Below are positions 607-64,000 of a stretch of 64,000 nucleotides of DNA, piece after piece. Every line of letters starts with the position of its first letter. Position 1 is the stretch's first letter. The translations under genes were made by a program, and so were the position numbers. The DNA comes from Macrostomum lignano (Eukaryota): NCBI GenBank assembly GCA_002269645.1, contig NIVC01003193.1, forward strand, positions 1-64,000, given 5' to 3'. The notes under the pieces were generated by a model. That model made no database searches. It was not told the DNA's origin and saw only the letters and a program-made list of their open reading frames with translations.

Positions 607-3600
607 CGTGAATCCGATCCACTTTTCCAACTGCTCCATACAAGAGTACAAACAGTTCTCGGTGGCCAATGGTCTCGGCTATTGCATGACCGGCCGCCGA
701 CCAAAGCCACCCTGGGCGGAATTGCGCACAAAGTGCGGCAACAGAGTGCTGGACTTCGGGGAGGAGTGCGACTGCGGCACGCCGCGGGTGAGTTGCCGTT
801 GAAAGGGCGGGTCGCCCCCCCCTTTAGGCGGAGACCAGAAAAAAATTAAAAAGGGGGACCAAGCGAATTTTCGCTAAATATACCGCACCCCCTCCGCTGC
901 CCTTGGGTCTTTACCCTCCAGAATCCGCCCCTTCAACAAATTTCTAGTTGCGCTAACTGCGCCACGGCAGACTTGAGTTGAAAAATGAAGTGGGGGTGCA
1001 AGGGTTGGACGGATTAAAGGTACCCCAATCAGTTTCCTCGTATCCTTTATTTCAGAATAGTCCAAAAAGAAATTGCTCACTGGCGCAATAGAGTGGCGAC
1101 TTTAGATGGGCAAAATCAGACGCATAGACATAAGTCATAGACACAAGGCCATAGACACAAGACCATAGACATAAGTCATAGACACAAGGCCATAGACACA
1201 AGACCATAGACATAAGTCATAGACACAAGGCCATAGACACAAGACCATAGACACAAGGCCATAGACACAAGACCATAGACACAAGGCCATAGACACAAGG
1301 CCATAGACACAAGGCCATAGACACAAGACATAGACACAAGGCCATAGACACAAGGCTATAGACACAAGGCCATAGACACAAGGCCATAGACACAAGGCCA
1401 TAGATACAAGGCCATAGACACAAGGCCATAGACACAAGGCCATAGACACAAGGCCATAGAGACAAGGCCATAGACACAAGGCCATAGACACAAGGCCATA
1501 GACACAAGGCCATAGACACAAGGCCATAGACACAAGGCCATAGACACAAGGCCATAGATACAAGGTCAATGACGTAAGGTAAGAACAGTGCGTGAAAAAT
1601 AGACCGTATTCGGTACCGCCTTTCGAATAATACGAGTTAGAGCTTCCCAGCAACCAGTGGAATGCAAACAAGGCAAGAGTGGCGACCTGGTCCTATTCTA
1701 GCTCATAGTCACATTTATCTTCATAAATAAACCAAATCTAGTTGAACTAGAACGTCTGCAATTTACACTAATTAGGACCTAAGACCTATAGTATCCAGGT
1801 GCGTGCGCATGCCTACAATAACATAACAGGTCCCAGCGAACTGAGTACCAAAATAATAAGAATTAATGAAATCAAAATACTTTCTTAAACTCTAGAATTT
1901 AAAAGTATACCCCCGAGGGTTGCCACACACACTTAATTACCCCAGCTAATGCTGGCACCCATTTTACAGCTGGGTGAACTAAAGCAATGCAGAGTTAAGT
2001 GTCTTGCTCAAGGGTCGGGAATCGGGAATCGGTCGGGAATCGAACCTCCGACCTTTCAGTCTTGAGTCCGACGCTCTAAACCCCTAGGCTACAACCCCCC
2101 CCCCCCAGTTCTCATTTCAACCCTGAATTCCAAACACCTATTTTAACTGGGCTTAACCCAACAATTTTGGCAGTTCTGCAACAACACCTGCTGCGATCCA
2201 ACCACATGCAAACTGACACCCGGGCCACCTGCGCCTCCGGCCAGTGCTGCAACACCACCACTTGCTCAATGGAGTCGAGTGGTTCAGTTTGCAGAGCCTC
2301 CCGAGGCGCCTGCGACCTGCCTGAGTACTGCAACGGCACCAGCGAGTGGTGTCCCGAGATCGACGATTACAAAATGGACGGCACCAGCTGCGCCACCGAT
2401 CCGGCTAATGCTTCGGTGAGAATTGCTGCGATTGCCTACTCACTAGTAGCGAGTAGAGAGTGAGGGATTGAATAGATATTGAAGATTTTCGTGAGGTGTA
2501 AAGACCTGCTGAAGGACCCGTGTGGTGTAGAGACAGATCTCCTGAATGAGCCTTGTAGTGTAGAGACAGAACTCCTGAAGGAGCCATGTGGTGTAGAGAC
2601 AGAACTCCTGAAGGAGCCATGTGGTGTAGAGATAGACCTGCTGAAGGACCCGTGTGGTGTAGAGATAGACCTGCTGAAGGACCCGTGTGGTGTAGAGATA
2701 GACCTGCTGAAGGACCCGTGTGGTGTAGAGATAGACCTGCTGAAGGACCCGTGTGGTGTAGAGACCTGCTGTAGTGACTGGGTGAAGAAGGTAGGTAAAA
2801 GCCTTAGATTTTTTATTCGAAAAGCCTGAAAAAAAAGATTATAGGGCGATTTTATCCCCGTAGTGAGCTCTAAATATATACTGCCAGTCGTGTCAAAATG
2901 TAATTTCGCCCATCATTCTCGTTCTCCCTCACATTTTCACACAGAGGGTTTTGGCCTATTGCTATCAGGGCAACTGCGTGACCAGAGACGCCCGCTGCAA
3001 GGCGCTGTTCACAGCTCCCGACTTCCGAGCGGCCCCCGAGTCCTACTCGGTCAAGACGAAGGACGATTCCGGCTTTGGCGAAGGCTACTGTAGCTACAGG
3101 ATTGAGACCTACAGTCCTGTCAAGTACACCTTTGTGCCGTGCACCACGCAGTGAGTTCGGTAGCTTAAACTCTCTTTAACACTAACTGGCGTAGGCTGCG
3201 ATTTTACGATCCGTGTGACTTTATCAAATGAAATTGCATCCATGTGACTTTCCCACATGACATTGCATCCGTGTGACTTTCCCTCATGACATTGCATCCG
3301 TGTGACTTTCCCTCATGACATTGCATCCGTGTGACTTTCCCTCATGACATTGCATCCATGTGACTTTCCCACATGACATTGCATCCGTGTGACTTTCCCA
3401 CATGACATTGCATCCGTGTGACTTTCCCTCATGACATTGCATCCGTGTGACTTTCCCTCATGACATTGCATCCGTGTGACTTTCCCTCATGACATTGCAT
3501 CCATGTGACTTTCCCACATGACATTGCATCCGTGTGACTTTCCCACATGACATTGCATCCGTGTGACTTTCCCTCATGACATTGCATCCATGTGACTTTC

Positions 3601-6600
3601 CCACATGACATTGCATCCGTGTGACTTTCCCTCATGACATTGCATCCGTGTGACTTTCCCTCATGACATTGCATCCATGTGACTTTCCCAGATGACATTG
3701 CATCCGTGTGACTTTCCAACATGACATTGCATCCATGTGACTTTCCCAGATGACATTGCATCCGTGTGACTTTCCCTCATGACATTGCATCCGTGTGACT
3801 TTCCCTCATGACATTGCATCCGTGTGACTTTCCCTCATGACATTGCATCCGTGTGACTTTCCCTCATGACATTGCATCCGTGTGACGTTCTCATCACGCA
3901 GAAACCAGCGCTGTGGAACTCTGTATTGCATTGGCACAATGCCAGACGGATTCCCAACAGCAAAGTGGAAAGGCTTTGCACTGAATGACGCCAAGTCCAT
4001 TGTGCCTATCAATCCGTCTGACCACACCCTGGCCTATGCTAGACTGGACTTGACAATATCCGGCTACCGAGATCCCGGCATGGTGCCGGATGGCGCAGAA
4101 TGCGGCCCAGGACTAGTGAGTTCGTTGAAAGTTTCTGGTAACATTGTTGGGAATTTCTACCAGCTCTGTTTGCTTAGAAGGTCTTGTTGGGGATGCTTGG
4201 GGCGGCCTTTAGGCCTTTCTCGTATAGAACTTTCCCCGAAGAAGCTTCGAGCCCCAAGCACTAGACTTAGACGAGATCCACGTAGACCTCCAGTTGTACC
4301 CAAGGGCACGCAAAATGGAGGGTCTACCGTCTAGAAAGCACCGATAGACTGAATTTCTTCATGCCTTTCAAACCTACGTTAAACGGTAGGAAACGGTGGT
4401 TTCTGGCATAAGGCCCAGGCTGGGTTGGCTTGGCCAGGTAATCCGACCATTTTACGAGACTGAATTCCTTACCTTGGCAATTTTGGTGGCATCTGTCTTT
4501 GCTTTTTTCTCGACACTTAATGTCCCCAATTTCCACATTTGAGCAGATGTGCATCAACTCAGAGTGCCTCAACGTAACCAAAGTGATGACCAACGCCACG
4601 ACGCTTGCCGAAGTGTCCAGCCTGCCGAACTGCAACGGCCAAGGCGACGTGACTCGGACGGGGCTGTGCTTCTGCTACTACGGCTTCAGCCCCCCGACTG
4701 TGTTGCTGTCGGATACGGCGGTTCGATCACCAATTTGCCGGCAGAGTCAGGTGAATAGCGGCCAGTCAGAGTATTCTTGAGTCATGAGAAATCAGAAAAT
4801 AGAAATGTACGTAGTGAAATCTACGAATGTGAAGAGAATCTCATGCAGAAGGTTATGCACTGATACTTAAACAGAGCCTAGAGCAATTTCATCCTCGGAT
4901 GAGGCCTTTTTTAATAGAGGCAGGGGCTGTGTGCACCCTGGCGCACTTTAAGCAACATTGTCGCACAACCGGCGAGAGGCATTACTGCCCATTCCACCGA
5001 CTCCCCTGAGCAGGCACACAAGCGCACGGATACGTACGCAGTCATACGCACAGGCACACACTCACACAGGAGTTTACAGCGGCTCTAACTTAATTTATCG
5101 TTAGGCATGTACACTTCATTGTGCCTTGGAGGTGGGCCTTAAGGGGCGTTAATTGCACGAGCAGAGCTAAGCCGAGATTCCAATTTAGCCCCAAATAAAC
5201 AGTAACATTGAAACTACCAAGATGGTTGGGAATTCCCGCTAGCAATTTTTTTGCTGCGCGGTAACGGTGCAAGGCAGGCACACAAAATTAAAAAACACGG
5301 CTAACTTTTTGTTTCGCACCTTCTTAAACAAGAATCAAGTCGCCAGCCCCACGAACCGTCTATATATTCAACAATTCTGTCTGAAAGTCGGATTTTTCCA
5401 TAAGCACTAGCGTATTCAGTACACCCCTGTGCGTTAATCAGCGCTGTGCCTCAATGCAGCCTTGTCAAGCCTCCAGATTTCATCAGCACGTCGACCACAT
5501 GTGTCTGTGTCAGCTCTGACTTCGATGGTCACTGGCTTTTACCCAGGCGGAGCTTTTGGACCTTCAACAGGTGGCACCAGGTGACTATGGACACTCTGGT
5601 GCGAACTTCTTTAGTTTCGCTGATCAAGCCTCGACAGTGGGCCAACCTCAACTGCTGGACATCCTCAGCTGGTCTCTCAAGCATTCCGTCAACACCCCGA
5701 CGCCGTCGTCACCTGGTGCCATCTGCTGAAGATTGTCGCCTCCTTGGTAGTTCGACGGGCGGAAAAATGGCTTGATATTCCTACTGTTAATGTGACTGCA
5801 CTTGGAATCGAGCCCGGGCCGCTGGCACATCAGAGCGCCGCGCTGGACCACTCTGCCACGCCCCCAGCTCACGGATGAGGTTCCCACGTGTAGCTTAGCG
5901 GTAAATAGTAGGAAAGTCAGAAACAGGTCTATCGCAATCTTTAATCTTACAATCAGAGTATGCAAGACAGCTCAATAGAGCGGCTCTTTGTTACGATTTA
6001 ATTCAAGCGAAGTTTGCTTTGGACATCTCTATTTCTCTCTATCTCTCTATGGCAACATTGGCAGGTTGCCATGGTAACAGAAGTAAATGGAGCTCTAAAC
6101 ACAATAGCTACTCGTATTTGAAAAATCGATTACAACCGTACAAATCTATCCATCAGGTGCCATCACAACGTCTACTATGACAACGCCTAAGCCAACAACA
6201 CCAACGACTCGACTTGAGTTCACAACGCTAGGTAAGAACTCTGATGGAACCAGATTAATAAAATTAATTTACCCCCCCCAAAATGGTCTGAAATTCAGTT
6301 TACAACAATTTGCACAGAACAAAGTCGTGACGACTTCTGGCTCTACATTGGCATCGGCATTGGCATCGCCATTGTGCTGGTCCTCGCCATTGTCTTCTTC
6401 GTGTGGCTGTACTTCTGGTGCCGTCGCAATGACTTCACGCCCTACATTGGCGGCTGCGACGTGCCCGTCCCCGACGCCAGCGCGGCTGCGAAGTTCCGCA
6501 GCTCCGCCGACATGCGCTCCTACCCGCTGGACGAGACGGCCTCGCCCGAGCAGGTTGCAGTGTCAACAGCGGGATTCAACCACAGCGGCAACGGCAGCGG

Positions 6601-7295: not shown

Positions 7296-7500
7296 CTAAC
7301 CCTAACCCTAACCCCTAACCCAAATCCCTAACCCAAACCCCTAACCCAAATCCCTAACCCAAATCCCTTAACCCAAACCCCTAACTCAAACCCCTAACCC
7401 AAATCCCTAACCCAAACCCCTAACTCAAACCCCTAACCCAAATCCCTAACCCAAACCCCTAACCTAAGGTCTAACTCTAACCCCTAATCCAAACCCTAAA
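7296..7500. repeat. Degenerate telomere-like (CCCTAA-containing) tandem repeat, interstitial
   Basis: CTAACCCTAACCC followed by CCCTAACCCAAAT/C variants. Confidence 0.8.
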
Positions 7501-8405: not shown

Positions 8406-50993
<42,588 letters not shown>

Positions 50994-52089
50994 TGTCGGA
51001 CAGCAGCCGCTGTGTCGGTAGCCATTGTTGGTCTTTTTAACAGAACGCATCATAACGCAGCATGTGGCCCCCAAAACATTTTAATGTCCTTCATACGCCA
51101 CTCTTTCAAACTGGGTTCTTGCTAATAATTCCCAGGTTGAGCGTCTTGACAATACACGCATCATCTCAAATTATTACCAAAATCAGCACTGCAAAGGACT
51201 ACTCAAAAAGCTCTATTGATATTCATAATAAAATTAAAAATCTATGTTAATTTTATATCCTGATATGTACATGTCCTGTTCCCAAAAAATCAAAAGAATG
51301 ACACAGCTGGACTCAATGGTTTTATGAATCTACTTGATTATTCTGATCCCTTTTGCTCTGCAGAGACTTCCGAAATTCTTCTGCATGGAGCCGCATACAG
51401 TGAACCATACAGGGGGCGGGTTGGCCTGGCTAGCCATGCCTTATGCCATTGCCACTTTTAGCGCCGCAGGCACTTATTTTGGCGCCGCAGGCACTCATTT
51501 TAGCGCCGCAGGCACTTAATTGCCTCCAGGTTTTTGGTATCCGCCGCGCCCAACCCCACCCCCCAGGCAATTGGGGGGGGGGCCGCGGCCCCCCCGCCCC
51601 CCCCCCTGGCTACGCCACTGCCTATAACAGCGGAATAAACGCGCGTACGAATTCAAAGAAATGTTTCTAGGAAAAAAAGTTTTTAAAAGCGCTTATTCCG
51701 GTGTTGGACTACGAAAATGCTAATCGACTGTACATGATGTATGCACTTGCAGTTTTCGTCAATCGTATATGCACCTGACTTTTTTATGCATGCACTTGAT
51801 ATATTTAATACGACTGCAAAAAGGCTGTATAGCAATAGATAAATAATCTTATAATTATTAACTATAAATGTACCAAGAAGCATGCAATCTGTTTGTTGCA
51901 TTCTTTCAATATTTTTTACTTTAACAACTTCTGCACTACCAGACCTTAAAATGAAATTTAGCAATAATAACAATCGATTACACCTGCCCCAATGGGCAGA
52001 TGTGCAACTGACAGCTCAGCCGCAGCTATTGAGCGGCGCATCTGAAGGCTCCGTACGGCTGCTCAGTCCAAGGACTGGGTGGTCGCCAC

Positions 52090-52270
52090 GCACACCCTCA
52101 ATTACCCCGGCTAATGCTGGCACCCATTTTACAGCTGGGTGAACTGAAGCAATGCAGAGTCAAGTGTCTTGCTCAAAGACACAAATTGTTCCAGAAGGAT
52201 CGGGAATCGAACCCCCAACCTTCAAGTCGTGAGTCCGACGCTCTGACCACCGGCCGGGCTACAACCCCCT
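52090..52270 (-). mobile_element. CORE-like tRNA-derived SINE, copy 2
   Basis: Aligns with 1915-2106 (GCTAATGCTGGCACCCATTTTACAGCTGGGTGAACT...GTGTCTTGCTCAA). Confidence 0.8.
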
Positions 52271-52590
52271 ACAACCCAAACTAAGAACTTCAGTTTGGCT
52301 GCAACGCACACACATTGCTTGCAGCTGCTTTGCTGATGCATGCAGAAAAAATTGGAACAATGAGATGGCTCAGCAGAGTCTACGGCTGCTAAGTGCAGGT
52401 CTTGCATAGCAAGTGGGGCGGCTATATTGTTGTACACCGATGCAGTACGCTATAGGGGGATGGGGGATGGGGAAGAGGATAGGAAGGGGAAACGCGGACG
52501 GTCGGCAGGCAGGATGTGAAAGCGGACAGCTTGCTGCTCAAAGTGAGAACTGTTTCTCCATTTTTCTGCATCCTGAGCCGCTTGCAGACC

Positions 52591-55500
52591 ATGTTCCTGC
52601 TGTTGTTTAGCAAGACCAAGAGAAAGTCCTCGGACAGCAACTTGGTCGCCATGGACTCGCTATCGGACAATCCGGAGGACCTCCTGCAGGAGCGGCGCCG
52701 CCTGTCCAAGCTGGAGAAGCGGCAGCGGGCCAGGGAGAAGAAGCGCCGTCGCGAGGCCAAGAAGCTGCGGCGGCTGCATCGATCCGGCAACGGAAGCGGC
52801 TGCCGTCACCTCTGCTGCTGCCTGGGCCGCTTCCCCTGCCTTCTGCTGCTTCTGGCAGGCCTGTCCGCCTTTCTCTACTTGTACTTTTATCGTGGACTCA
52901 GCATTCACTTGGCGCTGAGTGACCGGCTGCTCGATAGGCAGATGCTCCTGCGTAAGCAGCAACAGCAGCAACTGCCGCAGCAACAGTTGTTGCCCGCAAG
53001 GTTAGCTTATCAAAGATCAATACGTTTTGGGGCTTTGTCGTGCGATTCACCCATGAGGACCAACCCTCCAAGGCAAGAGTGTACCATGCTTTATGATTAG
53101 ACAATCAGAATTACCTCAACGCTGGAGTAAGATTCAACCCCACAGATGCTGGAATAACTGGATGGGCCACTCAGGCATATATAACTTAAGTAAAACAGCT
53201 TTCTACTTTCAGTTCAGTAGCAAAGAAGAATACATAAGGTATTTTATATAAAAGGCAGTTGAAATGACTTTGATTTAGAAGCCAAGCTTGCAGGCGTAAA
53301 ACAACTTGCGAATTGGTTCAGCAATAATGTACATTAGCCAGTCCATTGAAATGCACATGGCAGCTTTAGGCTGGAATTCCGAGAAAGGCAATAAAAACTG
53401 GGGCGGGGCGTTGGGGCGTAGTGTGTAAAGGCGCGGTTGGAGGGTTTCAGCTGGGGGTAAGAGGCAATAAAGAGCCTTGGCTTTAAAAATACATTAAAAT
53501 ACTTCTGTTTAACTTGCTACTGAACTGAAAGTAGCTTGCACGCAAATGCACTGAGTGACCCACCATCTAGTTATTCTGGCATTGAATGGCTAAATTTTTC
53601 CAGTGCTTAAGTTGACTCTAACCATAGCAAATCTACCCAACACACGATTTCCCCCATCTGCAGGCCACCTCCGGATTCTCATCTTCAAGCGGAGGCCTCG
53701 CCGCGTAGAAATTGGCGCCTTCGAAACGGTTCTTTAGTCTCCCAGAATCTGGTGCCGCATCAGTCGCCTACTCGGGCTTCGGCGAGACAGCCAAAAATCA
53801 TTCAAATGCCAAACAGATGCCCGAGTTCGTCTTTGTCCGCGCTGTTCCTGGCCACCCGTGATCAAGCAATCCGTGACGCGGCACCGAATTTTGTCCGTCG
53901 GCAGCGGGAAGCTGTGCGACGATCCTGGGGCGGCCCGGCCGGATTGAAGGCCGGAGGCTCCGTCGTCTTCTTGGTGACTGTGGAGAGACTGCGTACTACG
54001 CACTGAATCAGGTGCAAATTAGGGATGGGTTGCGTTGGCTCACTAGGAACCTGGGGGCTCAGTGGGGAATCTGAGGGTTCAGTCGGGAATCTGGGGGCTC
54101 TGTGGGGAATCTGAGGGTTCAGTCGGGAATCTGGGGGCTCTGTGGGGAATCTGAGGGTTCAGTGAGGAATCTGATGGCTCAGTGGTGAATCTGAAGGCTC
54201 AGTAGGGAATCTGATGGCTCAGTGGTGAATCTGAAGGCTCAGTATGGAATCTGATGACTCAGTGGAGAATCTGATGGCTCAGTGAGGAATTCGAGGGGCT
54301 CAGTGGGGAATCTGATGGCTCAGTGGTGAATCTGAAGGCTCAGTAGGGAATCTGAAGGCTCAGTGGGGAATCTGATGGCTCAGTGGTGAATCTGAAGGCT
54401 CAGTAGGGAATCTGATGGCTCAGTGGTGAATCTGAAGGCTCAGTAGGGAATCTGAAGGCTCAGTGGGGAATCTGATGGCTCAGTGGTGAATCTGAAGGCT
54501 CAGTAGGGAATCTGATGGCTCAGTGGTGAATCTGAAGGCTCAGTAGGGAATCTGATGGCTCAGTGGTGAATCTGAAGGCTCAGTAGGGAATCTGATGACT
54601 CAGTGGAGAATCTGATGGCTTAGTGAGGAATTCGAGGTGGCTCAGTGGGGAATCTGATGGCTCAGTGGTGAATCTGAAGGCTCAGTAGGGAATCTGATGG
54701 CTCAGTGGGAAATCTGATGGCTCAGTGGGGAATCTGATGGCTCAGTGGAGAATCTGGGGGCTCAGTGGGGAATCTGATGTCTCAGTGGGGAATCTGTGGG
54801 CTCAGTGGGGAATTTGCACGCGGGATTGGGGCTCACTGAAGAGAATTAAATAACCAACTCCAACAACCAACTGCTCGCGTGTAGGAGGCGAAGAAGTACG
54901 GCGACCTGATGATCATACAGTCGGCAGTCAGCAGCAACCCGAAGCTGGCGGAGCAGCAACCACACCTGCTGCTGTTTGCCCTGGCCAAGCTTCGGTCCCG
55001 CTGTCCTTTCGTCAGCCTCTACGGCAGGACAAACGCCGGGGTGCTGTGGAATCCGCGCCTGCTGAAGCAACTGCTACACCTGATGCAGCAGCGCGGCCAG
55101 CTTCAAGAAAGCCTCATGCTTGGCCGAGCCGTCCGCGGTCTGTCCAAGGACTCCAGCACCGGTCTCAACGAGCGGCTGGCCGCCGACCCGGGCTACCTAA
55201 TGACCGGCCGCGCGCTGGACGCCCTGTTGAAGTTGGCGAGAGGCAACCGCGACGAAGACGACGACCACCGGCTGGACGACGGTGTCACAGACAATCGCCT
55301 GACACAGTCATGAATACACGGAGTATAAAGTGAAAGGAAAGAAACAGTCCAGTGAATCGTGGTTGCCAGAAAGAGGACTACGCGAAGGATGCCCGACATC
55401 CCCAGTTCTATTTAATATCTTTCACCAAGCATGCATCAGGGAAGTTGAGGAGAAAAGAACACAAACAGCAAAGGAGAAAGAGCAAATATGTGGAATTGAA

Positions 55501-57104
55501 TGGACATACCTCCCAGGAAGCTCACTCCCACCTCAGCGAAGAAACCAGCCAAACTCGGAGACCAAAACCGAACTCATCAGGACAGTTCTATTTGCAGACG
55601 ACACCACTATCCTAGGCAACCGCAAGGAACTCAGCGCGGGCCTAGAGTCGACGAAAGAAATAATGGCAGGATTCGAAGAACAAACGAACGACAAAAAGCA
55701 AGAGGTAATGATATTCGGAACCAGAGAGGGAGGAAAAGTACGCATGCTAGGATCATGGACGGACACGAAGTACGACACGAGCCAGAGATTGCAAAAAGCG
55801 GCGAGAAGCTGGTCGACGATCCGTAGACGTTTCATCAAGTGCAGGTTGAAAAAGACCACGCAAGCGAAGGTCGTTGAAGCCTGTATAGAGAGCATCCTGC
55901 TATTCCACGCGAACATACGCCCATTCCTGAAGTCAGAAACGAAGCAACTACAAAGCTTCATGGACCGAATCTACCGGCAGATATGGAGCAGCAGGAAAAT
56001 GGAACCACTAAGGGAAATGGAGGCAAAAGGAATAAATATGCAGGACATTCGCAATGAACTAGAAGTAACGACAATACAAACAAAGATTGAGAAGAGCCAC
56101 CTGATCCGCATCGGACATGTGCTTCGCATGGAGGCGAACCGCCTAACGAAAAAGATGGTTCTCGGATGGTACAAGGGTCTGGAAAAGATAAGGAAAACAC
56201 GTAAGAGAAAAGGTAACACCATCGAATATTGGAAGCGACTACTACGCCAAGCAGGGATCGAGCCGGAAATGACAGAGAGACTAGCAACCGACCGCCAGAA
56301 ATGGCGTAAAATTGTTCAAGAACGCATAAGCCACCTCAAGAGATGGGAACAACAACAAGGAAAGAAGGCAGAAGCAAGGAACATCGAAAGGAACGACAAA
56401 CAGAAACAGGAGAAAACAAGAACATTCATATGTGAATACGAAGACTGCGGAAAGGAGTGCAAAAGCAAAGCAGGCCTGACCATTCACCAAAAGAGGATGC
56501 ACCGCAAGATAGAAGAACCAGTAACGTTCAAGTGCGTAAAATGCGAGAAGCAGTTCAGACAAGAGGCAACGTGGTTAAACCACGTAAAGGTCTGCGGAGG
56601 AGAGAGAGAAGTGGGAGGAAACCGCGTAAAATGCGCGACCTGTGCTCGAGAAATATCGAAATCAAACCTAGCGAGACACCGCAAAACCTGCGGTACAACG
56701 CGGGAAGAGACACGGTCCCCGGGAGGTGAGAGGAAGTACCGAGCGAAAACTAAACAATGCGAAGGTTGTGGGCGCACGCTCGCCGCGACGAACATGGCAC
56801 GCCACCTACGCACCTGCAAGGACTGCTGACGAGAGACCCCGAAGACTGCCCATGCCACACGGCGACAAAAGGGAAGAAGAAGAAGAAGGTGTCACAGACA
56901 ATCGCCTGACTGGCGACCTGAGGTTGAAGGCAGGAGTCCGTCTGGCAGACCTTGGCCGACAGCTGCGGGTGTCCCGCCGGCCACAGAGGTCGTTCTGCCT
57001 GGCCGGGCCTGAGCGCAGACGACATGGAGCACCAGTGGGCGAAGGTTTCAAGCAGCAGTCTGGAGTGCACGCAGTCGGCTGCTGAGCAGCCAGACGAAGA
57101 GTAG
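52591..57104 (+). CDS. Type II membrane glycosyltransferase-like protein, GT31 (B3GALT/B3GNT)-like; interrupted by an RTE insertion, so this copy is probably disrupted
   Basis: Exons ~52591-53000, 53664-54011, 54885-55303 and 56911-57104. N-terminal basic tail and TM (CLLLLLAGLSAFLYLYFY). GT31-like motifs RQREAVRRSWG, VVFL(G), EAKKYGDL, PGYLMTG and GLSADDMEHQW. A frameshift at ~53973 and a frame ambiguity after 56960. Confidence 0.7.
54050..54835. repeat. Intronic minisatellite, 20-bp unit GGAATCTGATGGCTCAGTGG
   Basis: Direct periodicity. Confidence 0.95.
55304..56887 (+). mobile_element. 5'-truncated RTE-clade LINE inserted in a coding exon
   Basis: Perfect 23-bp TSD GGTGTCACAGACAATCGCCTGAC (55281-55303, 56888-56910) and a (GAA)n tail. 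Confidence 0.95.
55330..56829 (+). CDS. RTE ORF, C-terminal portion (RT domains, RTE-type C-terminus, four zinc fingers)
   Basis: GLREGCPTSPVLFNI, LFADD, HLIRIGHVLRM, LATDRQKWR; one C2H2 and three C2HC motifs. Confidence 0.92.
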   Translation: MKGKKQSSESWLPERGLREGCPTSPVLFNIFHQACIREVEEKRTQTAKEKEQICGIEWTYLPGSSLPPQRRNQPNSETKTELIRTVLFADDTTILGNRKELSAGLESTKEIMAGFEEQTNDKKQEVMIFGTREGGKVRMLGSWTDTKYDTSQRLQKAARSWSTIRRRFIKCRLKKTTQAKVVEACIESILLFHANIRPFLKSETKQLQSFMDRIYRQIWSSRKMEPLREMEAKGINMQDIRNELEVTTIQTKIEKSHLIRIGHVLRMEANRLTKKMVLGWYKGLEKIRKTRKRKGNTIEYWKRLLRQAGIEPEMTERLATDRQKWRKIVQERISHLKRWEQQQGKKAEARNIERNDKQKQEKTRTFICEYEDCGKECKSKAGLTIHQKRMHRKIEEPVTFKCVKCEKQFRQEATWLNHVKVCGGEREVGGNRVKCATCAREISKSNLARHRKTCGTTREETRSPGGERKYRAKTKQCEGCGRTLAATNMARHLRTCKDC

Positions 57105-57960: not shown

Positions 57961-58465
57961 TCACTTTTGTATCTTTAAAAAGCTGTAGACATTCCTTTCT
58001 GTTTTTACAATTTCACAATATGCATAGTGAAATAGTCACAAAAAAGTACACAATGTTCGTAAGACCTTGTGCGCGACTGAGTTTCAATATTTAAATGACA
58101 CTGCTGCCAAATATAAAATGTAAATAAATGTTTAACAAACTTTTTTAGACTTGAAATTGAGTTGTTCGCTATGAATAAAATTTACTGTACTATCTGTCGC
58201 GAGAAACTACTTATTTAAGTGTTCAAGTAGTATTTTATGTGCATTAAGTTCTTTCAAATCTTTTTGAAATCTTGCTATCAGTAGAACGTACAGAACAATA
58301 AAAAAGATTTTTCTTTCAAGCATTTAAATTGATACATCTCGAGAAACATTATCATAATTTTCGCAGAAGCCCAGTACATTTCTGGTAGACATGTTTCGAT
58401 TTTTATACTCGTAGTTAGATTTTCGTCTCTTGTTCACAAACTATTTCGAGAGCAGCGGTGGCAGC

Positions 58466-60394
58466 TCACTGGCCACCTCCGGCTGGACGGTGCAGTTCAA
58501 CAGCGGCTCGCTGCGCCAGCACCACCAGTACTTCGTTCTCCCACACGTACCGGCCGGGTTCGGGCTGCTTGGTGTGCCGGCTGTAAGCGGCCATGAAGTC
58601 GGTCATCAGGCAGTCGCGCTCAGACTCGGCCAGCTGCCAGGTGAACGGCACCAGCCAGGTGAGATGGCCGCGGCACTCCGCCTCGCTCTCCGTGGTGTAG
58701 GTGAAAGCCATGCGCTGGCAGAGGCTGACGGAGAAGCCGGCGGATGTCAGGATGTCGGCGAAGGCGGCCGCAGGATCCGGGGCGCAGCGCCAGTCGGCGA
58801 TGTTTGGATCCTGCCAGCGGGTGGAGTGCGCGAACTCCTGCGGGGATAAATGGGGACAGGGCGAGTATTATGGCACACCTAGCTGAAAAACTGGGAGGCA
58901 GACAATGATGACCCCTGAGGGACTGGGAGACAGACAATGACCCCTGAGGGACTGGGAGACAGACAATGACACCTGAAGGACTGGGAGACAGACAATGACC
59001 CCTGAGGGACTGGGAGACAGACAAGGACACCTGGAGGACTGGGAGACAGACAAGGACACCTGGAGGAGTGGGAGACAGCAATGACACCTGCAGGACTGGG
59101 AGACAGACAAGGACACCTGGAGGACTGGGAGACAGCAATGACACCTGCAGGACTGGGAGACAGACAAGGACATCTGAAGGACTGGGAGTCAGACAGAAAT
59201 TGGGGAGTTGTAAAACAGAGTCACGGGAAAATATGAAGAACTGAATAGGTCCGACAGGAAGGTGAATGGTCCGGGATTACCAATAAATATAACGTAAAAG
59301 GTAAAATCCCTTCCATTAAAAACTAACGGAAGTCTGAAATTCAGCCAAAGTGCGTCGACTTCTTTGAACCGAATTCCGTAAATTGCGCTACACAGTCCAC
59401 AGGAATTCAGTATTAAAGGGCGCAATTTACTGCATGTTTTAGCTAGAATAATTTGCAACGAGAAATTGGAGAAAATATATTACTCAATAGCTAGCTACTG
59501 TTAACCTAAATAAGAAGTATTCATTAAAAGTAGTTTAGTTTGCTGACACACCAAGGATAAATAATGAATTTAAAGAACTTAGATTTCATTAATAGTTAAG
59601 ATTCAACATTTGTTAATTAACTTTCTTCAGGTTTCTTAGAAGCGATAGCTGTCTATAAGAAGCAATAGGACTGGCTGACTCTACGAGAGAGTTGATTCTT
59701 AGAAAACCGAGAGAAACTAAGACTGGCACAAAAGCACATCACACGCGAGGAACAATGGCTTACCATGGGAAGACAGGTCCTTATAAGGCTAGACTAAATA
59801 TAATAAATAGAATCATTCCTGTCCTTCCTTAGCTTTGGGCCTTGCGAATCATCTATAAACAAGCCCGCAGTCTGAATTTGGAGCTTGTACACTTGAAGGT
59901 CAAGGTCAAAATGTACTTTTTTACGCATTTGCACACACGTGTAATGCAACATTTATAATGTACAAATGAACCATGTCAGACTAATGTAGTGTTAAACGTT
60001 ACATTTAATTTTCATGAGCAAAAGAAGAAGTTAAAATTTTAAAGATACAACTCAAGACAAGACTCACTTTGATAATAGGGCCCCATTTTTCTGTTGTTGC
60101 CAAATCCTTCATAGTGGCTTGAAAATTTGGCCCAGGTTTAATGCCAATCACATGAAACATAATAGTCTTGCTTGGCTTGATCAAACATTTTAGACTCTCT
60201 AAGCAGTTGGTCAGGTTCTTGATCCAATGCAATGTTAGAAAGCTAGTGATTATGTCATAGTCCATTGATGGCACATGTGCATGCCAATGAAGTTGATTGA
60301 GATCAACCAAGAGCAACTCAAGCTGTGGTTGGTCTGGTGTACTTTCCTTTGATTTCTGTTCATGCTCGGTTGCAAACTTTAGAAAGTTTGGGTT
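58466..60394 (-). CDS. Class I SAM-dependent methyltransferase (JHAMT/trans-aconitate MT-like), last two exons; 5' exons not identified
   Basis: Exon 60394-60068 (AG...GTGAGT, phase 0): NPNFLKFA...LVD...YDIITSFLTLHWI..L..LIKP. Exon 58837-58466 (CAG acceptor, phase 0): DP.AAFADILTSAGF...LVPF...FMAAY, stop TGA. The motif I (GxGxG) exon was not found. Confidence 0.72.
58890..59190. repeat. Intronic minisatellite, ~29-bp unit
   Basis: GACTGGGAGACAGACAATGACCCCTGAGG in tandem. Confidence 0.92.
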
Positions 60395-61050
60395 CTATAA
60401 AAGGTCAAGGAAAGGACTGATTTGGTCTAAAATATGACAAAAATAAAGACTAATTAGGCTAATAAACATTATAGGCAAAGGCCATTACATTAGGCCTAAT
60501 TCTTTAAAAATAGGCCTAGCCTTTAAAAAAACAAGTTTATATCTAGAAATTACAAATAGGATGTAGGCAGTAGGTCTAAATTTTAATCTAGGTCTATGTT
60601 TTGCTTACAAATTTTCAAGGCATAGGGCCTATCTAATATTGTAATAATAATTGGTAACATATCTATTTAACACTTAATAAGAATTATGATTGATTGCTAA
60701 CTAAATAAACCTATACGGCTATAGGCCTATTTCTAAAAATAGGGCTAAAATAGGCCTATTTAAAATCTAGAAATAAATATTTTTAAATTAGACCTAGCAT
60801 AAAATTTATCTCTATATTAATAAAATATTAAGGCCTACTTATATAATTACTTATATTTACTTAGGGCCTAGCCTATATATACAACTATATAGGCTAACAG
60901 GACTGCAATAGACTTTTTGCTCTAGAATGCTTTTTGGATATATAGTACAGTTTAAACCTTGACTACAATAAAGCTTTAGACTTAGACAATTATAAAATAC
61001 TTAGACAAACCTTAGACTAGCTTAGAGATTTAATATATTATGACTATAGG

Positions 61051-61947
61051 CAGTGTTGGGCACTAGTCCATTAATAAGCATTAATCCGTTAATAAGTGTT
61101 AATAAGCATTAAGATTTTTTAGTAACATTAATGGACTGCCATTAAGATTTTTTTGAACTAATGGATTAACAAATTTGCATTAATAATTTTGTAAGTTAAC
61201 AACAAATTCATCATTAACATTAATGGCAATGGCAATGTCAATGACCAAAGATGCAAAGAAAGGACAAAAATATAAGTCTGAAAAGAAGTTATAACATTAT
61301 GACTGTATTTAAAATTTATCCAAATGCTTAAATAATCTTTTTGTTTATGACGATGATCATGCAAATATAATAACTTCTTACTAATTAAATAATGAATTAA
61401 AATTGTGAAGGTTATTAGTTGCATGTAAGCATTGATTGCTTTGATTCACTTCTTTTTGAATCTTTTGTAACTTTCTGCTGCGCCTGTTAATGCTACTGAA
61501 ACAACCTTCCTATTTATATTTTATTATAAACTAATTAGCTTTCAATTATTAACTAATTAGTTCAAGTTTCAAAAAAGTAAGTTACTTCTTTTACCATATG
61601 CTTACTTTTAGTAGTATTATACATACAAGTTTTTAAAAATATTATTATTTATTATAAAAATTATTTATTACTTTTTTAGCTTGTGAATTGTTTAGATGCC
61701 CTCTGTGTTTCACTAAAAAGATGGAAAAGCAAAGACTGTATATTACGAAGTCTGCTTTGGAAAAAAAAGTGCAAGATTTTTGTGTTAACTTTAATAGATT
61801 AATGCTTATTAATGATTATCAGTTAACTTTCAGTTAACTTAACAAAAATAAGACATTAAGAGTTAATAAGTTAAGATTTTTTGTTTTAATGCTAATGCTT
61901 TTGCCATTAATGGAAGTTAAGATTTTCATTAATGGTGCCCAACATTA
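61051..61947. mobile_element. Non-autonomous hAT-like DNA transposon (degraded)
   Basis: TIRs CAGTGTTGGGCAC (61051) / GTGCCCAACATTA (61935-61947). 8-bp TSD ACTATAGG (61043-50) / ACTATAAG (61948-55). Internal CATTAATG-type repeats. Confidence 0.75.
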
Positions 61948-62504
61948 ACTATAAGGTACTTTTATTAGCTTATACAAGTCTAAGAATGTCTTGCATTTTA
62001 CTTTTGCATTTTATCAATATTTTCCTACTATGCCAAGTTGCCTAGATTCTAGCTAGACTATCAGTTTATCTATAATTTAAAACAATTAAAGATAGGCATA
62101 CAAAGTAATAAGATCTATAAAGAAAAATCAAAATAGGCCTAAGGTTTTAAGATACTGACACTAATATTATAGACTGCCATTTTAATTTAGCCTTTAATTT
62201 GATTGATTATACCTAAGTGTAGACCCAGAAAAATTTTGAAAGGGAGAAAGCTATATTAAGCACTAGGCCTACAATCCAATATTGGAAAATAAATCTAATA
62301 TAGTTATAGGCCAAAAAGTATAGCCTACATTTTTGGCCACAACAAAGCAAGAAGCATGACCCCTTGCCCCCCCTCTAGATCTGCCTTTGATTATACCAGC
62401 CATATTCTAATAGCCAAATGTCCAACTAACATATCAGCTGCCACTATTGCATGTTATATCTCAAGGCTACATATGGCTATTCAGTCTAAGGACTGAAGGG
62501 TTGC

Positions 62505-62812
62505 CATACACCTTTAATTACCCTAGCTAATACTATCATTAGTAAAAATTTTATAGCTAAGTAAATTAAAGCAATGTAAAGTTATGTGTTTTATTCAAGG
62601 TTATAAATTATTCTAGTAAGATTAGAAATCAAATGTTCAATAGGGAATAGGCCTACAATCTAGGGATCCTAAGATCCCGAAATCTTAAGATTAGGCCCAA
62701 ATCTTGGGATTCTAAATCTTAGGATTTTGATTATGCCTGAATCCTAGGATAGAATCCCTAATTCCCAACCTTTAAGTCATAAGTCTAATACTCTAACCAC
62801 TAGGCTCTAACC
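62505..62812 (-). mobile_element. Hypermutated CORE-like SINE copy with a nested ~120-bp MITE (62641-62760, TAGGGA...TCCCTA)
   Basis: Aligns to the 1915 and 52090 copies with almost exclusively C>T/G>A differences. Confidence 0.75.
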
Positions 62813-64000
62813 TAGTGACTAAGCCTTAAATATAGATAATAAGATAATAACTAAATTAGGCCTTAATTATAGAAAAAATGAATAATGATATATAATAAAA
62901 GCATTTATAATGATAAAGTGCAGGTAAAGAGCAGAGCAAGCTGCTATCCCTTTGGATGACCACCCTCCTATCCCCTTAGGTAAAATCCTCTATGATAAGA
63001 AGTGACCACTGTCTTATCTTTTTATGAGGTGACCTATTATAATTTTTTATATACAAGCTAATTTTATATGTATTCTTTATGAGATTTTAGCATAATGCAC
63101 TGCTCTAATTCTAAAAATTTGCAAGGGAAATGAGGTGACTACCCAACTACCACACCTTTCTAATTGAAAGTAGGGAATACAAAATCCAAAGTTTTGCCAA
63201 TCCTAGGATTCATAGGATTAGGATATCCTAGACTTTGAAAATCCTGGGATTCTTGCGATTGGGATAGGCCCTATCCCAGACTTTGTCAATCCTAGGATCT
63301 TGACAAATTGGGCCAAGATTCTAGGAGCCTATTATCAAAAAGGTTTCTAATATTTGTTTGTGACATTTTGGTTTATAAAGCCATATAATATGATTTTAAA
63401 GGGCTTTCAATGATAAAAGTACAATAGAAAAAATATATTTTGCAAATAAGAAACTGATAGTTAGCTCTAAATTGGAGTATGACATATAGGCTAGCCTAAT
63501 ATATATGCTTTTTTACATCTTGGTATTAGCTCAAGAAAATCACATTTGATTGTGATATATCTAGGGAATGATAGTTTATATAACTATGGCCTAAGGTATT
63601 AATACTAAGAATAAGAGGGGGATTAGACCTCACTCTCCTAGGGGCACCTATCCTAGGTAGAGAATTGGTAGGCCTAGCTTTGGTTGTAGTCTAGAAGATT
63701 CAAAATCCTAGGATATTATAGGCCTAATCCTAGGATTTCAAGATCTTTGGATTACATTCCCCAATTGGAAGTGCTACACTGCTATTGACTATTATATAAT
63801 GGTCTATTACAATGAAACTATTATTTGTATTTTGTAGCCTATGAATATTAGTAGGCCCTAGGCTTTTTTATTGCTTAAAGATAAGAACAACCTAGTGTAA
63901 GGTCTAATAAATTATGGCCCAGGAATTTTTGCAATCAAATGAATAATGCCACATTGTGACATTATATTATTACAACTTACCCAATCAATAGCAGTAATCA

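What the first reader, a model, noticed from the sequence alone, without database searches (positions are those of the whole stretch)
59500..64000. Sharply bounded domain of C>T/G>A hypermutation, RIP-like, in an animal genome
Seen: I count only ~8 CpG in 60001-64000, whereas other AT-rich intervals (51700-52000, 58000-58420) retain CpG. The SINE copy at 62505-62812 differs from intact copies almost only by C>T and G>A. Example: TTCAAGTCGTGAGTCCGACG becomes TTTAAGTCATAAGTCTAATA, 7 of 7 changes, including CG>TA doubles and CpA/TpG sites. MITE motifs appear as CCTAGG/CTTAAG/CTTGGG, consistent with ancestral CCCGGG. Known: 5mC deamination gives CpG>TpG/CpA, while progression to TpA via CpA is the hallmark of fungal repeat-induced point mutation, which I do not know to be described in animals. 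Inference: a regional germline process (dense CpG plus non-CpG methylation, or a deaminase) is erasing this segment, perhaps because it is duplicated. This is the best candidate in the window for an undescribed system.
Basis: partly seen in the sequence, partly recalled or inferred. Interest (0 to 1): 0.85.

Follow-up and report, generated by a model that had tools for sequence, protein, structure and literature searches.

The report
CpG-free mutated domain inside flatworm gene
In the flatworm Macrostomum lignano, the front two-thirds of a working methyltransferase gene has lost essentially all CpG sites and keeps accumulating extra C-to-T changes, which looks like the footprint of a sharply bounded germline DNA-methylation domain rather than a fungal-style repeat-destroying system.

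Summary
Window 60001-64000 has 8 CpG against 93.5 expected. A SINE inside differs from an intact copy by 63 C>T/G>A changes against 1 reverse transition.

The window is Macrostomum lignano contig NIVC01003193.1. The domain runs from 59,950 to about 64,500-65,100, past the window end. It covers the start-codon exon, intron 1 and exon A of an intact three-exon methyltransferase gene. The last exon lies outside it. GC3 is 0.19, 0.45 and 0.88 across the three exons.

An old paralog on another contig has the same layout. A homeologous copy aligns through the domain and both flanks. Transversions are equal inside and outside. Transitions are 2.4-fold higher per site inside, and 3.7-fold per G/C site. 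No CpG is conserved inside, while flank CpGs are not hypermutable.

The changes are strand-symmetric and depend on the 3' neighbour, not the 5' neighbour. Duplicated flanks are unaffected and the exons remain under purifying selection.

My best reading is a germline cytosine-methylation domain over the 5' gene body, with CpG and some non-CpG deamination acting steadily. It is not RIP, not an APOBEC-type process, not biased gene conversion and not an assembly chimera. Methylation itself was not measured.

The parts
59951..64000 (.). CpG-free, AT-rich domain (GC 0.25-0.37). It continues past the window end to about record 64,500-65,100.
   Evidence: 8 CpG against 93.5 expected. Extension seen in L001. 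Transitions against homeolog L004 are 2.4-fold those of the flanks, with equal transversions.
60068..60394 (-). Exon A of the methyltransferase gene (aa 1-109 of model PAA52728). It lies inside the domain. GC3 is 0.45 with 0 CpG. The donor GTGAGT is at 60067 and the acceptor TAG precedes 60394.
   Evidence: 100% match to P0078. Homologs align at 34-41% identity. Composition. Open in L004.
58466..58834 (-). Exon B, the last exon including the stop codon. It lies outside the domain. GC is 0.67, GC3 0.88, with 35 CpG in the 330 bases analysed (record 58505-58834).
   Evidence: Only 1 synonymous difference from L004.
63981..64000 (-). The last 20 bases of exon 0. The full exon is record 64220-63981, with the ATG at 64220 outside the window. 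It encodes the motif LDLGCGTCENTKWF. GC3 is 0.19.
   Evidence: tblastn of P0084 on L001. Composition. GTAAGT donor read from the sequence.
60395..63980 (-). Intron 1. It lies wholly inside the domain and carries the decayed SINE, a MITE-like element and CCTAGG-motif elements.
   Evidence: Exon mapping. Repeats.
58835..60067 (-). Intron 2. The domain boundary lies inside it at about 59,950. It contains a 29-bp minisatellite (58883-59195) and an AT-rich stretch (59200-59950) that keeps its CpG.
   Evidence: The stretch is shared with L004 and has baseline transitions, so the boundary is not the edge of a young insertion.
62389..62815 (-). tRNA-derived SINE copy, heavily C>T/G>A mutated, with an internal expansion at about 62635-62744.
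51976..52275 (-). Intact SINE copy outside the domain (15 CpG in the 51976-52290 stretch counted), used as the ancestral proxy.
1916..2100 (-). Second intact, partial SINE copy (9 CpG in the 1890-2125 stretch counted), used as a control pair.
61045..61953 (.). MITE-like element with terminal inverted repeats. The left end reads CAGTGTTGGGCAC and the right end reads as TAATGTTGGGCAC.
   Evidence: (I25).

Best explanation
The domain is the mutational footprint of a discrete, sharply bounded block of germline cytosine methylation. The block covers the 5' part of the transcription unit of a live class-I SAM methyltransferase gene in Macrostomum lignano: the promoter-proximal region, exon 0, intron 1, exon A and 120 bp of intron 2.

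Shown: within the block every CpG has been lost. Cytosines at non-CpG sites also turn into thymine about 3-5 times faster than in the flanks. This happens on both strands equally and depends on the 3' neighbour (CpG > CpA >= CpT > CpC). It has been going on steadily, both before and after the split of the homeologous subgenomes. Everything in the block drifts to AT: SINE, other repeats, intron and synonymous sites. Selection keeps the two exons open.

Inferred: the agent is DNMT1/DNMT3-type methylation, with CpG maintenance plus lower-level de novo non-CpG methylation, followed by 5mC deamination. The block is set by the gene's position or activity, because an old paralog carries the same block with different edges.
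For: Organism and enzymes. The window is M. lignano contig NIVC01003193.1. The species keeps DNMT1 and DNMT3 and has low-level 5mC of unknown distribution (PMC11292947, PMC9246332, PMC10658182).

Gene mapping. The three exons are colinear with homologs, and the boundary falls inside intron 2. GC3 is 0.19 / 0.45 / 0.88 across the exons, with CpG counts of 1 / 0 / 35.

Same layout elsewhere. Old paralog L002 is CpG-free from its ATG to mid-intron 2, with a CpG-normal last exon. The cDNA L003 is CpG-poor only over its first ~300 nt.

Internal control between L001 and homeolog L004:
- Domain: ts 240, tv 114 in 4308 sites.
- Flanks: ts 141, tv 134 in 5897 sites.
- Transversions are equal (p=0.24), and so are S<->W transversions (p=0.93).
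- Transitions are 2.4-fold higher per site (p=1e-16) and 3.7-fold per G/C site (p=6e-33).

CpG behaviour. Flank CpGs are not hypermutable (6%, like other contexts). In the domain 0 CpG are conserved, and non-CpG mismatches run at 20/16/10% of C for CpA/CpT/CpC against 3-7% in the flanks.

Signature. Mutation depends on the 3' neighbour and not the 5' neighbour. The changes are strand-symmetric (33 C>T against 30 G>A) and are not strand-clustered (chi-square p=5e-6).

Coding control against L003. Exon A shows 50 S>W transitions against 5 W>S. Exon B shows 10 against 14. Transversions are similar.

AT-richness control. The equally AT-rich neighbour 59200-59950 keeps its CpG and has baseline transitions, so AT-richness alone is not the cause.
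Against: No methylation measurement was available, so 5mC at this locus is inferred.

Classical invertebrate gene-body methylation is described as CpG-only, with much milder CpG loss and little GC shift. The strong non-CpG component here needs an extra assumption: non-CpG methylation or a methylation-linked deaminating activity.

With no CpG left, maintenance methylation has no substrate, yet the transition excess continues.

Most post-split differences could not be polarised. The few that could give 26 S>W against 16 W>S, so part of the excess may be T>C/A>G.

CpG loss also covers the ATG exon and at least 300 bp upstream of it, whereas gene-body methylation usually spares the promoter. The true transcription start is unknown.

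Only one gene family was sampled.
Confidence: 0.55

Rival explanations
1. A regional cytosine-deaminating or repair-deficient chromatin state that does not involve 5mC. Examples are a heterochromatin block with poor uracil or T:G repair, or a recruited deaminase. It would act on both strands of the 5' gene body.
For: The excess is transition-specific and domain-limited, and it continues after all CpG are gone. CpT is hit about as much as CpA after the split, which is not the textbook DNMT3 order.
Against: Complete and selective CpG loss, with CpG the most mutable context (73% and 50%), points to a CpG-recognising activity. There is no TpC or WRC 5' preference and no strand-coordinated clusters, which AID/APOBEC enzymes would give. 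There is no transcription-strand asymmetry.
Confidence: 0.17
2. A compositional effect of fixation bias. The flanks and last exon would be kept GC-rich by GC-biased gene conversion or selection. The domain would be a recombination-cold stretch drifting to the AT-rich mutational equilibrium, so nothing is hypermutated.
For: GC3 of 0.88 in exon B is extreme. Polarised recent changes in the domain are not far from balance, at 19 S>W against 13 W>S. The paralog's repeats show a moderate 4:1 per-site bias.
Against: Biased gene conversion acts on all S<->W changes. Yet S<->W transversions are identical inside and outside (1.25% against 1.22%, p=0.93), and only transitions differ. The S>W ts:tv ratio differs between exon A and exon B (p=0.008). 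The SINE shows 63:1, which would imply an equilibrium GC near 6%. CpG is specifically eliminated inside and is not hypermutable outside.
Confidence: 0.1
3. A true RIP-like, duplication-triggered premeiotic hypermutation. The segment would have been recognised as a repeat and mutated in bursts.
For: C>T/G>A occurs on both strands, with CpA hit at 54% in the SINE. The TpA/ApT product index is 1.0-1.13. AGGCCT, which is made only of resistant contexts, occurs 11 times in 4 kb against 8 times in the other 60 kb. The locus exists in three homeologous copies plus old paralogs.
Against: The duplicated flanks of the same homeologs are not mutated. Exon B is duplicated as well and is untouched. Both exons inside stay open and conserved. 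The substrate index (CpA+TpG)/(ApC+GpT) is 1.23-1.44, which fails the <1.03 criterion. The CpA preference is not reproduced in L002 or in the exon. The rate is compatible with steady decay.
Confidence: 0.04
4. An artefact: a chimeric assembly join to foreign or contaminant AT-rich DNA, or sequencing or polishing error.
For: Composition changes abruptly at about 59.95 kb. 36% of Mlig_3_7 assembly length lies in scaffolds that are chimeric between subgenomes (PMC10733133).
Against: One colinear gene bridges the boundary with canonical splice sites. The same domain and boundary occur in three independently assembled homeologous contigs and in a paralog. A host SINE lies inside the domain.
Confidence: 0.01

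Closest known systems
Mosaic / gene-body CpG methylation of invertebrates and its CpG-depletion footprint (sharply bounded methylated transcription-unit domains in Ciona; low-CpG o/e gene classes with 5'-biased gene-body methylation in insects such as honeybee). These details are from my own knowledge.
   Same: CpG loss is confined to part of a transcription unit in a species that keeps DNMT1 and DNMT3. Neighbouring DNA has CpG o/e of about 0.8-1 and non-hypermutable CpG. The edges are sharp. The gene stays functional.
   Different: The loss is far more extreme (o/e 0.09, with 0 CpG conserved between homeologs). GC falls by 20-35 points, and GC3 goes from 0.88 to 0.19-0.45 within one gene. Non-CpG cytosines are also 3-4-fold more mutable. 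The ATG exon and upstream few hundred bp are included. Methylation itself was not measured.
Fungal repeat-induced point mutation (RIP; RID and DIM-2 cytosine methyltransferase homologs) and the AT-rich isochores it leaves
   Same: C>T/G>A on both strands, specificity set by the 3' neighbour, TpA enrichment, abrupt AT-rich blocks next to GC-balanced DNA, and a likely link to a C5-methyltransferase.
   Different: It is not triggered by duplication, since duplicated flanks are spared. It is not gene-destroying. CpG is the top target rather than CpA. The canonical substrate index fails. The process looks slow and continuous rather than a premeiotic burst.
AID-driven somatic hypermutation and APOBEC editing / kataegis
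   Same: Cytosine deamination is concentrated over the first kilobases of a transcription unit, and both strands are hit (as in somatic hypermutation).
   Different: There is no WRC or TpC 5' motif and no strand-coordinated runs. The change is germline-fixed and shared by homeologs, it spans 4.5-8.5 kb, and CpG is the preferred target.
Vertebrate-type isochores / GC-biased gene conversion, and the deamination-feedback model of isochores (Fryxell and Zuckerkandl; from my own knowledge)
   Same: There is a large regional GC and GC3 contrast. AT-rich DNA accumulates more C>T.
   Different: The scale is a few kilobases, with the edge inside an intron. S<->W transversions are unaffected. An equally AT-rich neighbouring stretch shows no excess.

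Membership tests
Fungal-type RIP | Mutation is triggered by, and coextensive with, duplicated sequence | tested here: not met
   Homeologs L004 and L005 are duplicated for about 3 kb or more beyond both edges of the domain. Flank spectra are normal (ts/tv 0.96 and 1.15, against 2.11 inside). The duplicated exon B is unaffected.
Fungal-type RIP | G:C to A:T transitions on both strands, far in excess of the reverse | tested here: met
   The SINE has 33 C>T plus 30 G>A against 1 reverse transition. Exon A has 50 against 5.
Fungal-type RIP | CpA>TpA preference and RIP indices (TpA/ApT > 0.89 and (CpA+TpG)/(ApC+GpT) < 1.03) | tested here: not met
   The product index is 1.0-1.13, which passes. The substrate index is 1.23-1.44, which fails. 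The context order is CpG 73% > CpA 54% > CpT 26% > CpC 19% in the SINE. In L002 repeats it is 50/29/23/21%.
Fungal-type RIP | Inactivates the affected genes through nonsense and missense load | tested here: not met
   Exons 0 and A are open in L001, L004 and L002. They change less than the surrounding intron (1.7% and about 4.5% against 8.2%).
Fungal-type RIP | Depends on a RID/DIM-2-type cytosine methyltransferase acting premeiotically | not testable with these tools
   The literature reports only DNMT1 and DNMT3 in M. lignano. No genome-wide gene search was possible.
Invertebrate gene-body (mosaic) CpG methylation footprint | CpG depletion confined to a transcription unit, next to CpG-normal DNA | tested here: met
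   o/e is 0.09 inside and 0.8-1.2 in adjacent AT-rich DNA. The domain maps to the ATG exon through exon A. The same holds in paralog L002.
Invertebrate gene-body (mosaic) CpG methylation footprint | CpG sites are hypermutable only where methylated | tested here: met
   In the flanks, 6% of CpG cytosines differ between homeologs, the same as other contexts. In the domain, 0 CpG are conserved and all 8 counted CpG-context (YpG) sites in the domain differ between the two copies.
Invertebrate gene-body (mosaic) CpG methylation footprint | The organism encodes DNMT1 and DNMT3 and has 5mC | not testable with these tools
   Taken from the literature only: PMC11292947, PMC9246332, PMC10658182. The primary paper (Wasik 2015) is not held.
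Invertebrate gene-body (mosaic) CpG methylation footprint | 5mC is actually present on this stretch in germline DNA | not testable with these tools
   No bisulfite or native-read data were accessible.
Invertebrate gene-body (mosaic) CpG methylation footprint | The effect is restricted to the CpG context | tested here: not met
   Non-CpG transitions are elevated about 3-4-fold per cytosine. The SINE has 44 non-CpG C>T among 131 sites.
AID/APOBEC-type deamination | 5'-neighbour motif (TpC, CpC or WRC) and strand-coordinated clusters | tested here: not met
   By 5' neighbour the mutated fractions are T 47%, A 42%, C 45% and G 29%. There are 37 runs against 32.4 expected.
GC-biased gene conversion / isochore boundary | All S<->W changes, transversions included, differ between compartments | tested here: not met
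   S<->W transversions are 54/4308 inside against 72/5897 outside, p=0.93.

The most novel reading that the evidence does not exclude
Macrostomum lignano targets a mutagenic cytosine-methylation activity, at CpG plus CpA/CpT, to discrete 5' gene-body blocks in its germline. The activity is strong enough to erase every CpG. It raises non-CpG C>T several-fold and recodes live exons, taking GC3 from about 0.9 down to 0.2-0.45. This would be an animal counterpart of the methyltransferase-linked mutagenesis known from fungal RIP/MIP, but aimed at transcription units rather than repeats.
Probability: 0.25. Interest if true: 0.75.

Novelty: new variant of a known kind. Interest (0 to 1): 0.5.

Why it matters
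[quoted passage not shown] This locus predicts, from sequence alone, where the low-level 5mC of M. lignano sits and how sharply it is bounded.

If the non-CpG component is confirmed, a methylation domain would be shown to act as a local mutator that reshapes the codon usage and protein composition of a functioning gene. Within one gene, GC3 runs from 0.19 to 0.88. That bears on how intragenic compositional heterogeneity arises. It also bears on whether DNMT-linked deamination beyond CpG exists in animal germlines.

The three homeologous subgenomes of M. lignano give a built-in clock. They make the question testable genome-wide with existing data.

Tried and rejected
- BLAST of the domain against the rest of the window, in four letters and in purine/pyrimidine coding, found only the SINE. 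There is no hidden duplicate in the window.
- A word-indexed protein search with the exon A translation found nothing. The exhaustive HMMER search then found the gene model.
- Exact look-ups of the non-LTR ORF and of a UniRef model found no contigs.
- ARAGORN finds no tRNA genes in the window.
- Comparing the two arms of the MITE-like element gave an unreliable alignment beyond about 100 bp (ts 56, tv 38, 106 gap columns). I did not use it.
- L001 against L005 differ almost only in one 2-kb patch, where transversions are raised too (ts 30, tv 22). I read this as a conversion or recombination tract and not as evidence on hypermutation. I used it only for a small polarised count.
- Parsimony polarisation of exon A using the window gene as outgroup is confounded by parallel C>T. 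There are 26 shared sites against about 17 expected by chance.
- The primary M. lignano genome and methylation paper is not held. Searches for a M. lignano methylome or for RIP-like processes in animals found nothing relevant.
- Hypotheses rejected: contaminant or chimera, APOBEC/AID, transcription-strand-asymmetric mutagenesis (no skew), and AT-richness as a self-sufficient cause (control stretch 59200-59950).

Full report
**1. The observation**

A 1-kb scan shows GC falling from about 0.45-0.55 to 0.25-0.33 after 60 kb. CpG counts are 2, 4, 1 and 1 in the last four kilobases. That is 8 CpG against 93.5 expected (o/e 0.09). AT-rich intervals elsewhere keep their CpG: 51700-52000 has o/e 0.73, 58000-58420 has 1.20 and 59200-59950 has 0.81. 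The last regularly spaced CpG is at 59,997. Apart from tandem arrays, 59951-64000 is the only stretch of the window with <=1 CpG per 300 bp and GC<0.40.

Symmetrised dinucleotide o/e values in the domain, with the rest of the window in brackets where measured:
- CG 0.09
- CA/TG 0.97 (1.19 outside)
- TA 1.05 (0.74 outside)
- GC 1.59
- CC/GG 1.50

AGGCCT, made only of the least mutable contexts, occurs 11 times in these 4 kb. It occurs 8 times in the other 60 kb.

**2. The SINE**

The only homology between the domain and the rest of the window is a tRNA-derived SINE. Copy 62389-62815 was compared with the intact copy 51976-52275. It differs by C>T 33, G>A 30, A>G 1, T>C 0 and 19 transversions. 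Fisher p = 3e-18 for the directional asymmetry, and 6e-14 without CpG sites. Identity is 67.6% in four letters and 90% in purine/pyrimidine coding.

The intact copies carry the tRNA-like B-box sequence GGTTCGATTCCC and 15 and 9 CpG. The domain copy has 1 CpG. This fixes the polarity.

Mutation depends on the 3' neighbour (chi-square p=5e-6):

| 3' context | mutated / sites |
|---|---|
| CpG | 19/26 |
| CpA | 26/48 |
| CpT | 10/39 |
| CpC | 8/43 |
| GCC | 0/11 |

It depends hardly at all on the 5' neighbour (T 47%, A 42%, C 45%, G 29%). C>T and G>A changes are interspersed, with 37 runs against 32.4 expected.

**3. Organism and wider sequence**

The intact non-LTR ORF at 36048-39740 is 100% identical to Macrostomum lignano proteins. 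An exhaustive HMMER search with ORF 60008-60394(-) found NCBI model PAA52728, which is BOX15_Mlig009429g1. Its contig, NIVC01003193.1 of assembly GCA_002269645.1, has the same coordinates as the window.

The literature held here says M. lignano retains DNMT1 and DNMT3. [quoted passage not shown]

**4. What the domain contains**

The ORF is exon A (60394-60068) of a class-I SAM methyltransferase gene on the minus strand. A GTGAGT donor links it to exon B (58834-58466), which lies in GC-rich, CpG-rich DNA. A full-length homolog (P0084, 304 aa) maps a further exon 0 at record 64220-63981. Exon 0 carries the ATG and the LDLGCGTCENTKWF motif.

The CpG-free stretch runs from 59,950 to about 64,500. 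CpG stays sparse to about 65,100. It therefore covers the promoter-proximal region, exon 0, intron 1 (with the SINE and a MITE), exon A and 120 bp of intron 2.

The boundary sits inside an intron of one colinear gene, which excludes a chimeric join.

| Exon | GC3 | CpG |
|---|---|---|
| exon 0 | 0.19 | 1 |
| exon A | 0.45 | 0 |
| exon B | 0.88 | 35 |

**5. The pattern recurs**

An old paralog sits on another contig (L002). Its exons are only 65-73% identical at the DNA level and its introns cannot be aligned. It is CpG-free and AT-rich from its ATG (10001) to about 18,500, which is inside intron 2. Its last exon is again GC-rich and CpG-normal. In the cDNA contig L003 only the first ~300 nt are CpG-poor. 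Its exon A has GC3 0.89 and 21 CpG.

Taking L003 as reference gives a same-gene, same-age control:

| | S>W transitions | W>S transitions | transversions |
|---|---|---|---|
| exon A of the window gene | 50 | 5 | 39 |
| exon B of the window gene | 10 | 14 | 56 |

S>W transitions per S site differ with p=2e-12.

Repeats inside the L002 domain, compared with outside copies, show 106 G/C>A/T against 36 reverse transitions. By context the fractions are CpG 50%, CpA 29%, CpT 23% and CpC 21%. The CpA preference is therefore weaker there.

**6. Homeologs give a clock**

M. lignano has three homeologous subgenomes (PMC10733133). The protein cluster holds two more members, and their loci were fetched. 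L005 is nearly identical to L001. L004 aligns colinearly over L001 2221-13506 and has the same CpG-free domain.

L001 against L004:

| Region | transitions | transversions | sites |
|---|---|---|---|
| upstream flank | 65 | 68 | 2925 |
| domain | 240 | 114 | 4308 |
| downstream flank | 76 | 66 | 2972 |

Transversions are equal inside and outside (p=0.24). So are S<->W transversions (p=0.93). Transitions are 2.4-fold higher per site (p=1e-16) and 3.7-fold higher per G/C site (p=6e-33). The raised windows coincide with the CpG-free stretch. The adjacent AT-rich stretch that retains CpG (record 59,394-59,894) is at baseline.

In the flanks, CpG cytosines differ no more often than other cytosines (6%). 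In the domain no CpG is conserved. Non-CpG mismatches amount to 20% (YpA), 16% (YpT) and 10% (YpC) of cytosines, against 3-7% in the flanks.

Polarising the SINE with the intact copy shows that 61 of 63 C>T/G>A changes predate the L001/L004 split. After the split there are 7 S>W against 3 W>S transitions. From the shared and post-split transversions I estimate that the SINE is about four times older than the split. On that estimate the post-split per-cytosine rate would give roughly the observed 34% non-CpG loss. No burst is needed. This last step is my inference.

**7. The gene is alive**

All three exons are open in L001 and L004. Exon 0 differs at 4 codons and exon B at 1. Exon A differs at 14 codons. 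Surrounding neutral divergence is 8.2% in the domain and 4.5-4.8% in the flanks. Exon A aligns to distant homologs at 34-41% identity, which is higher than for exon B.

**8. Interpretation**

The process is transition-specific, strand-symmetric and driven by the 3' neighbour. It hits CpG first, is regionally bounded and is tied to the 5' part of a transcription unit. It persists over time and does not depend on duplication.

The best fit is the footprint of a germline cytosine-methylation block with 5mC deamination, including a non-CpG component. The species is known to keep DNMT1 and DNMT3.

The alternatives fit less well:
- It fails the defining tests for RIP. Duplicated flanks are spared, genes are not inactivated and the substrate index is 1.23-1.44.
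- It fails for AID/APOBEC. There is no 5' motif and no strand clusters.
- It fails for biased gene conversion, because S<->W transversions are unchanged.
- It fails for AT-richness acting alone, because of the control stretch.
- It fails for an artefact, because it occurs in three homeologs and a paralog.

What remains unexplained by textbook gene-body methylation is the strength of the CpG loss. The several-fold non-CpG excess, and its continuation after every CpG has gone, are also unexplained.

**9. Limits**

- Methylation was not measured.
- Only one gene family was sampled: three homeologs, one paralog and one cDNA.
- Most post-split changes are unpolarised.
- The species of run SRR28338165 is unknown.
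- The transcription start is not mapped.

Noticed in passing
window 36048-40858 (-): An apparently intact non-LTR retrotransposon. ORF2 is 1230 aa with endonuclease, reverse transcriptase and RNase H domains, and an upstream ORF of 372 aa precedes it. It is 100% identical to parts of many M. lignano UniRef gene models that fuse it to host genes, so those models are probably chimeric annotations.
   Followed up: partly
window 11194-17425, 19051-35830, 41213-41799: Large 23-bp satellite arrays (about 270 and 737 copies). The 19051-35830 and 41213-41799 arrays are AT-rich (GC 0.31-0.38) yet have CpG o/e of 1.3-1.8. The 11194-17425 array is CpG-poor (o/e 0.30-0.57). So AT-rich DNA outside the domain can keep its CpG.
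   Followed up: partly
window 3882-4334 (+) and 48367-49032 (+): Two ORFs share a cysteine-rich motif (...RDPG[ML]VPDGAECG...). This suggests paralogous exons of a host gene family separated by minisatellite-rich DNA. Neither has a Pfam hit.
   Followed up: no
window 7300-7496 and 42537-43079: A telomere-like variant repeat, CCCTAACCCAAAC, occurs about 15 times. A (TTAG) array of about 135 copies lies interstitially.
   Followed up: no
record 64220-63981 (L001 6175-6414); L002 14527-14871: The NCBI gene models are incomplete. PAA52728, PAA94774 and PAA62367 are marked partial because the ATG exon was missed. PAA78943 on the paralog contig skips exon A. The full gene has three coding exons.
   Followed up: yes
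L001 6001-8000 (record 64394-62394) against L005: L001 and L005 are almost identical, with 3 and 4 differences in 3.6 and 2.7 kb of flank. The exception is a 2-kb patch with about 2.6% divergence (ts 30, tv 22). This looks like a gene-conversion or recombination tract between subgenomes.
   Followed up: partly
record 68950-70394 (L001 1-1445): A second CpG-poor, AT-rich stretch (GC 0.29) lies upstream of the gene. It is absent from the L004 and L005 alignments. It shares a ~110-bp palindromic element with L002 14060-14169. What it belongs to is unknown.
   Followed up: no
L002 28471-30692: The 5' end of a threonyl-tRNA synthetase gene is also AT-rich (GC 0.29-0.33) with partial CpG depletion (o/e 0.24-0.74). 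This hints that 5' gene-body CpG loss may be common in this genome.
   Followed up: no
window 55330-56829 (+): A reverse-transcriptase fragment is fused in frame to C2H2 zinc fingers. This is probably a second, truncated retroelement.
   Followed up: no
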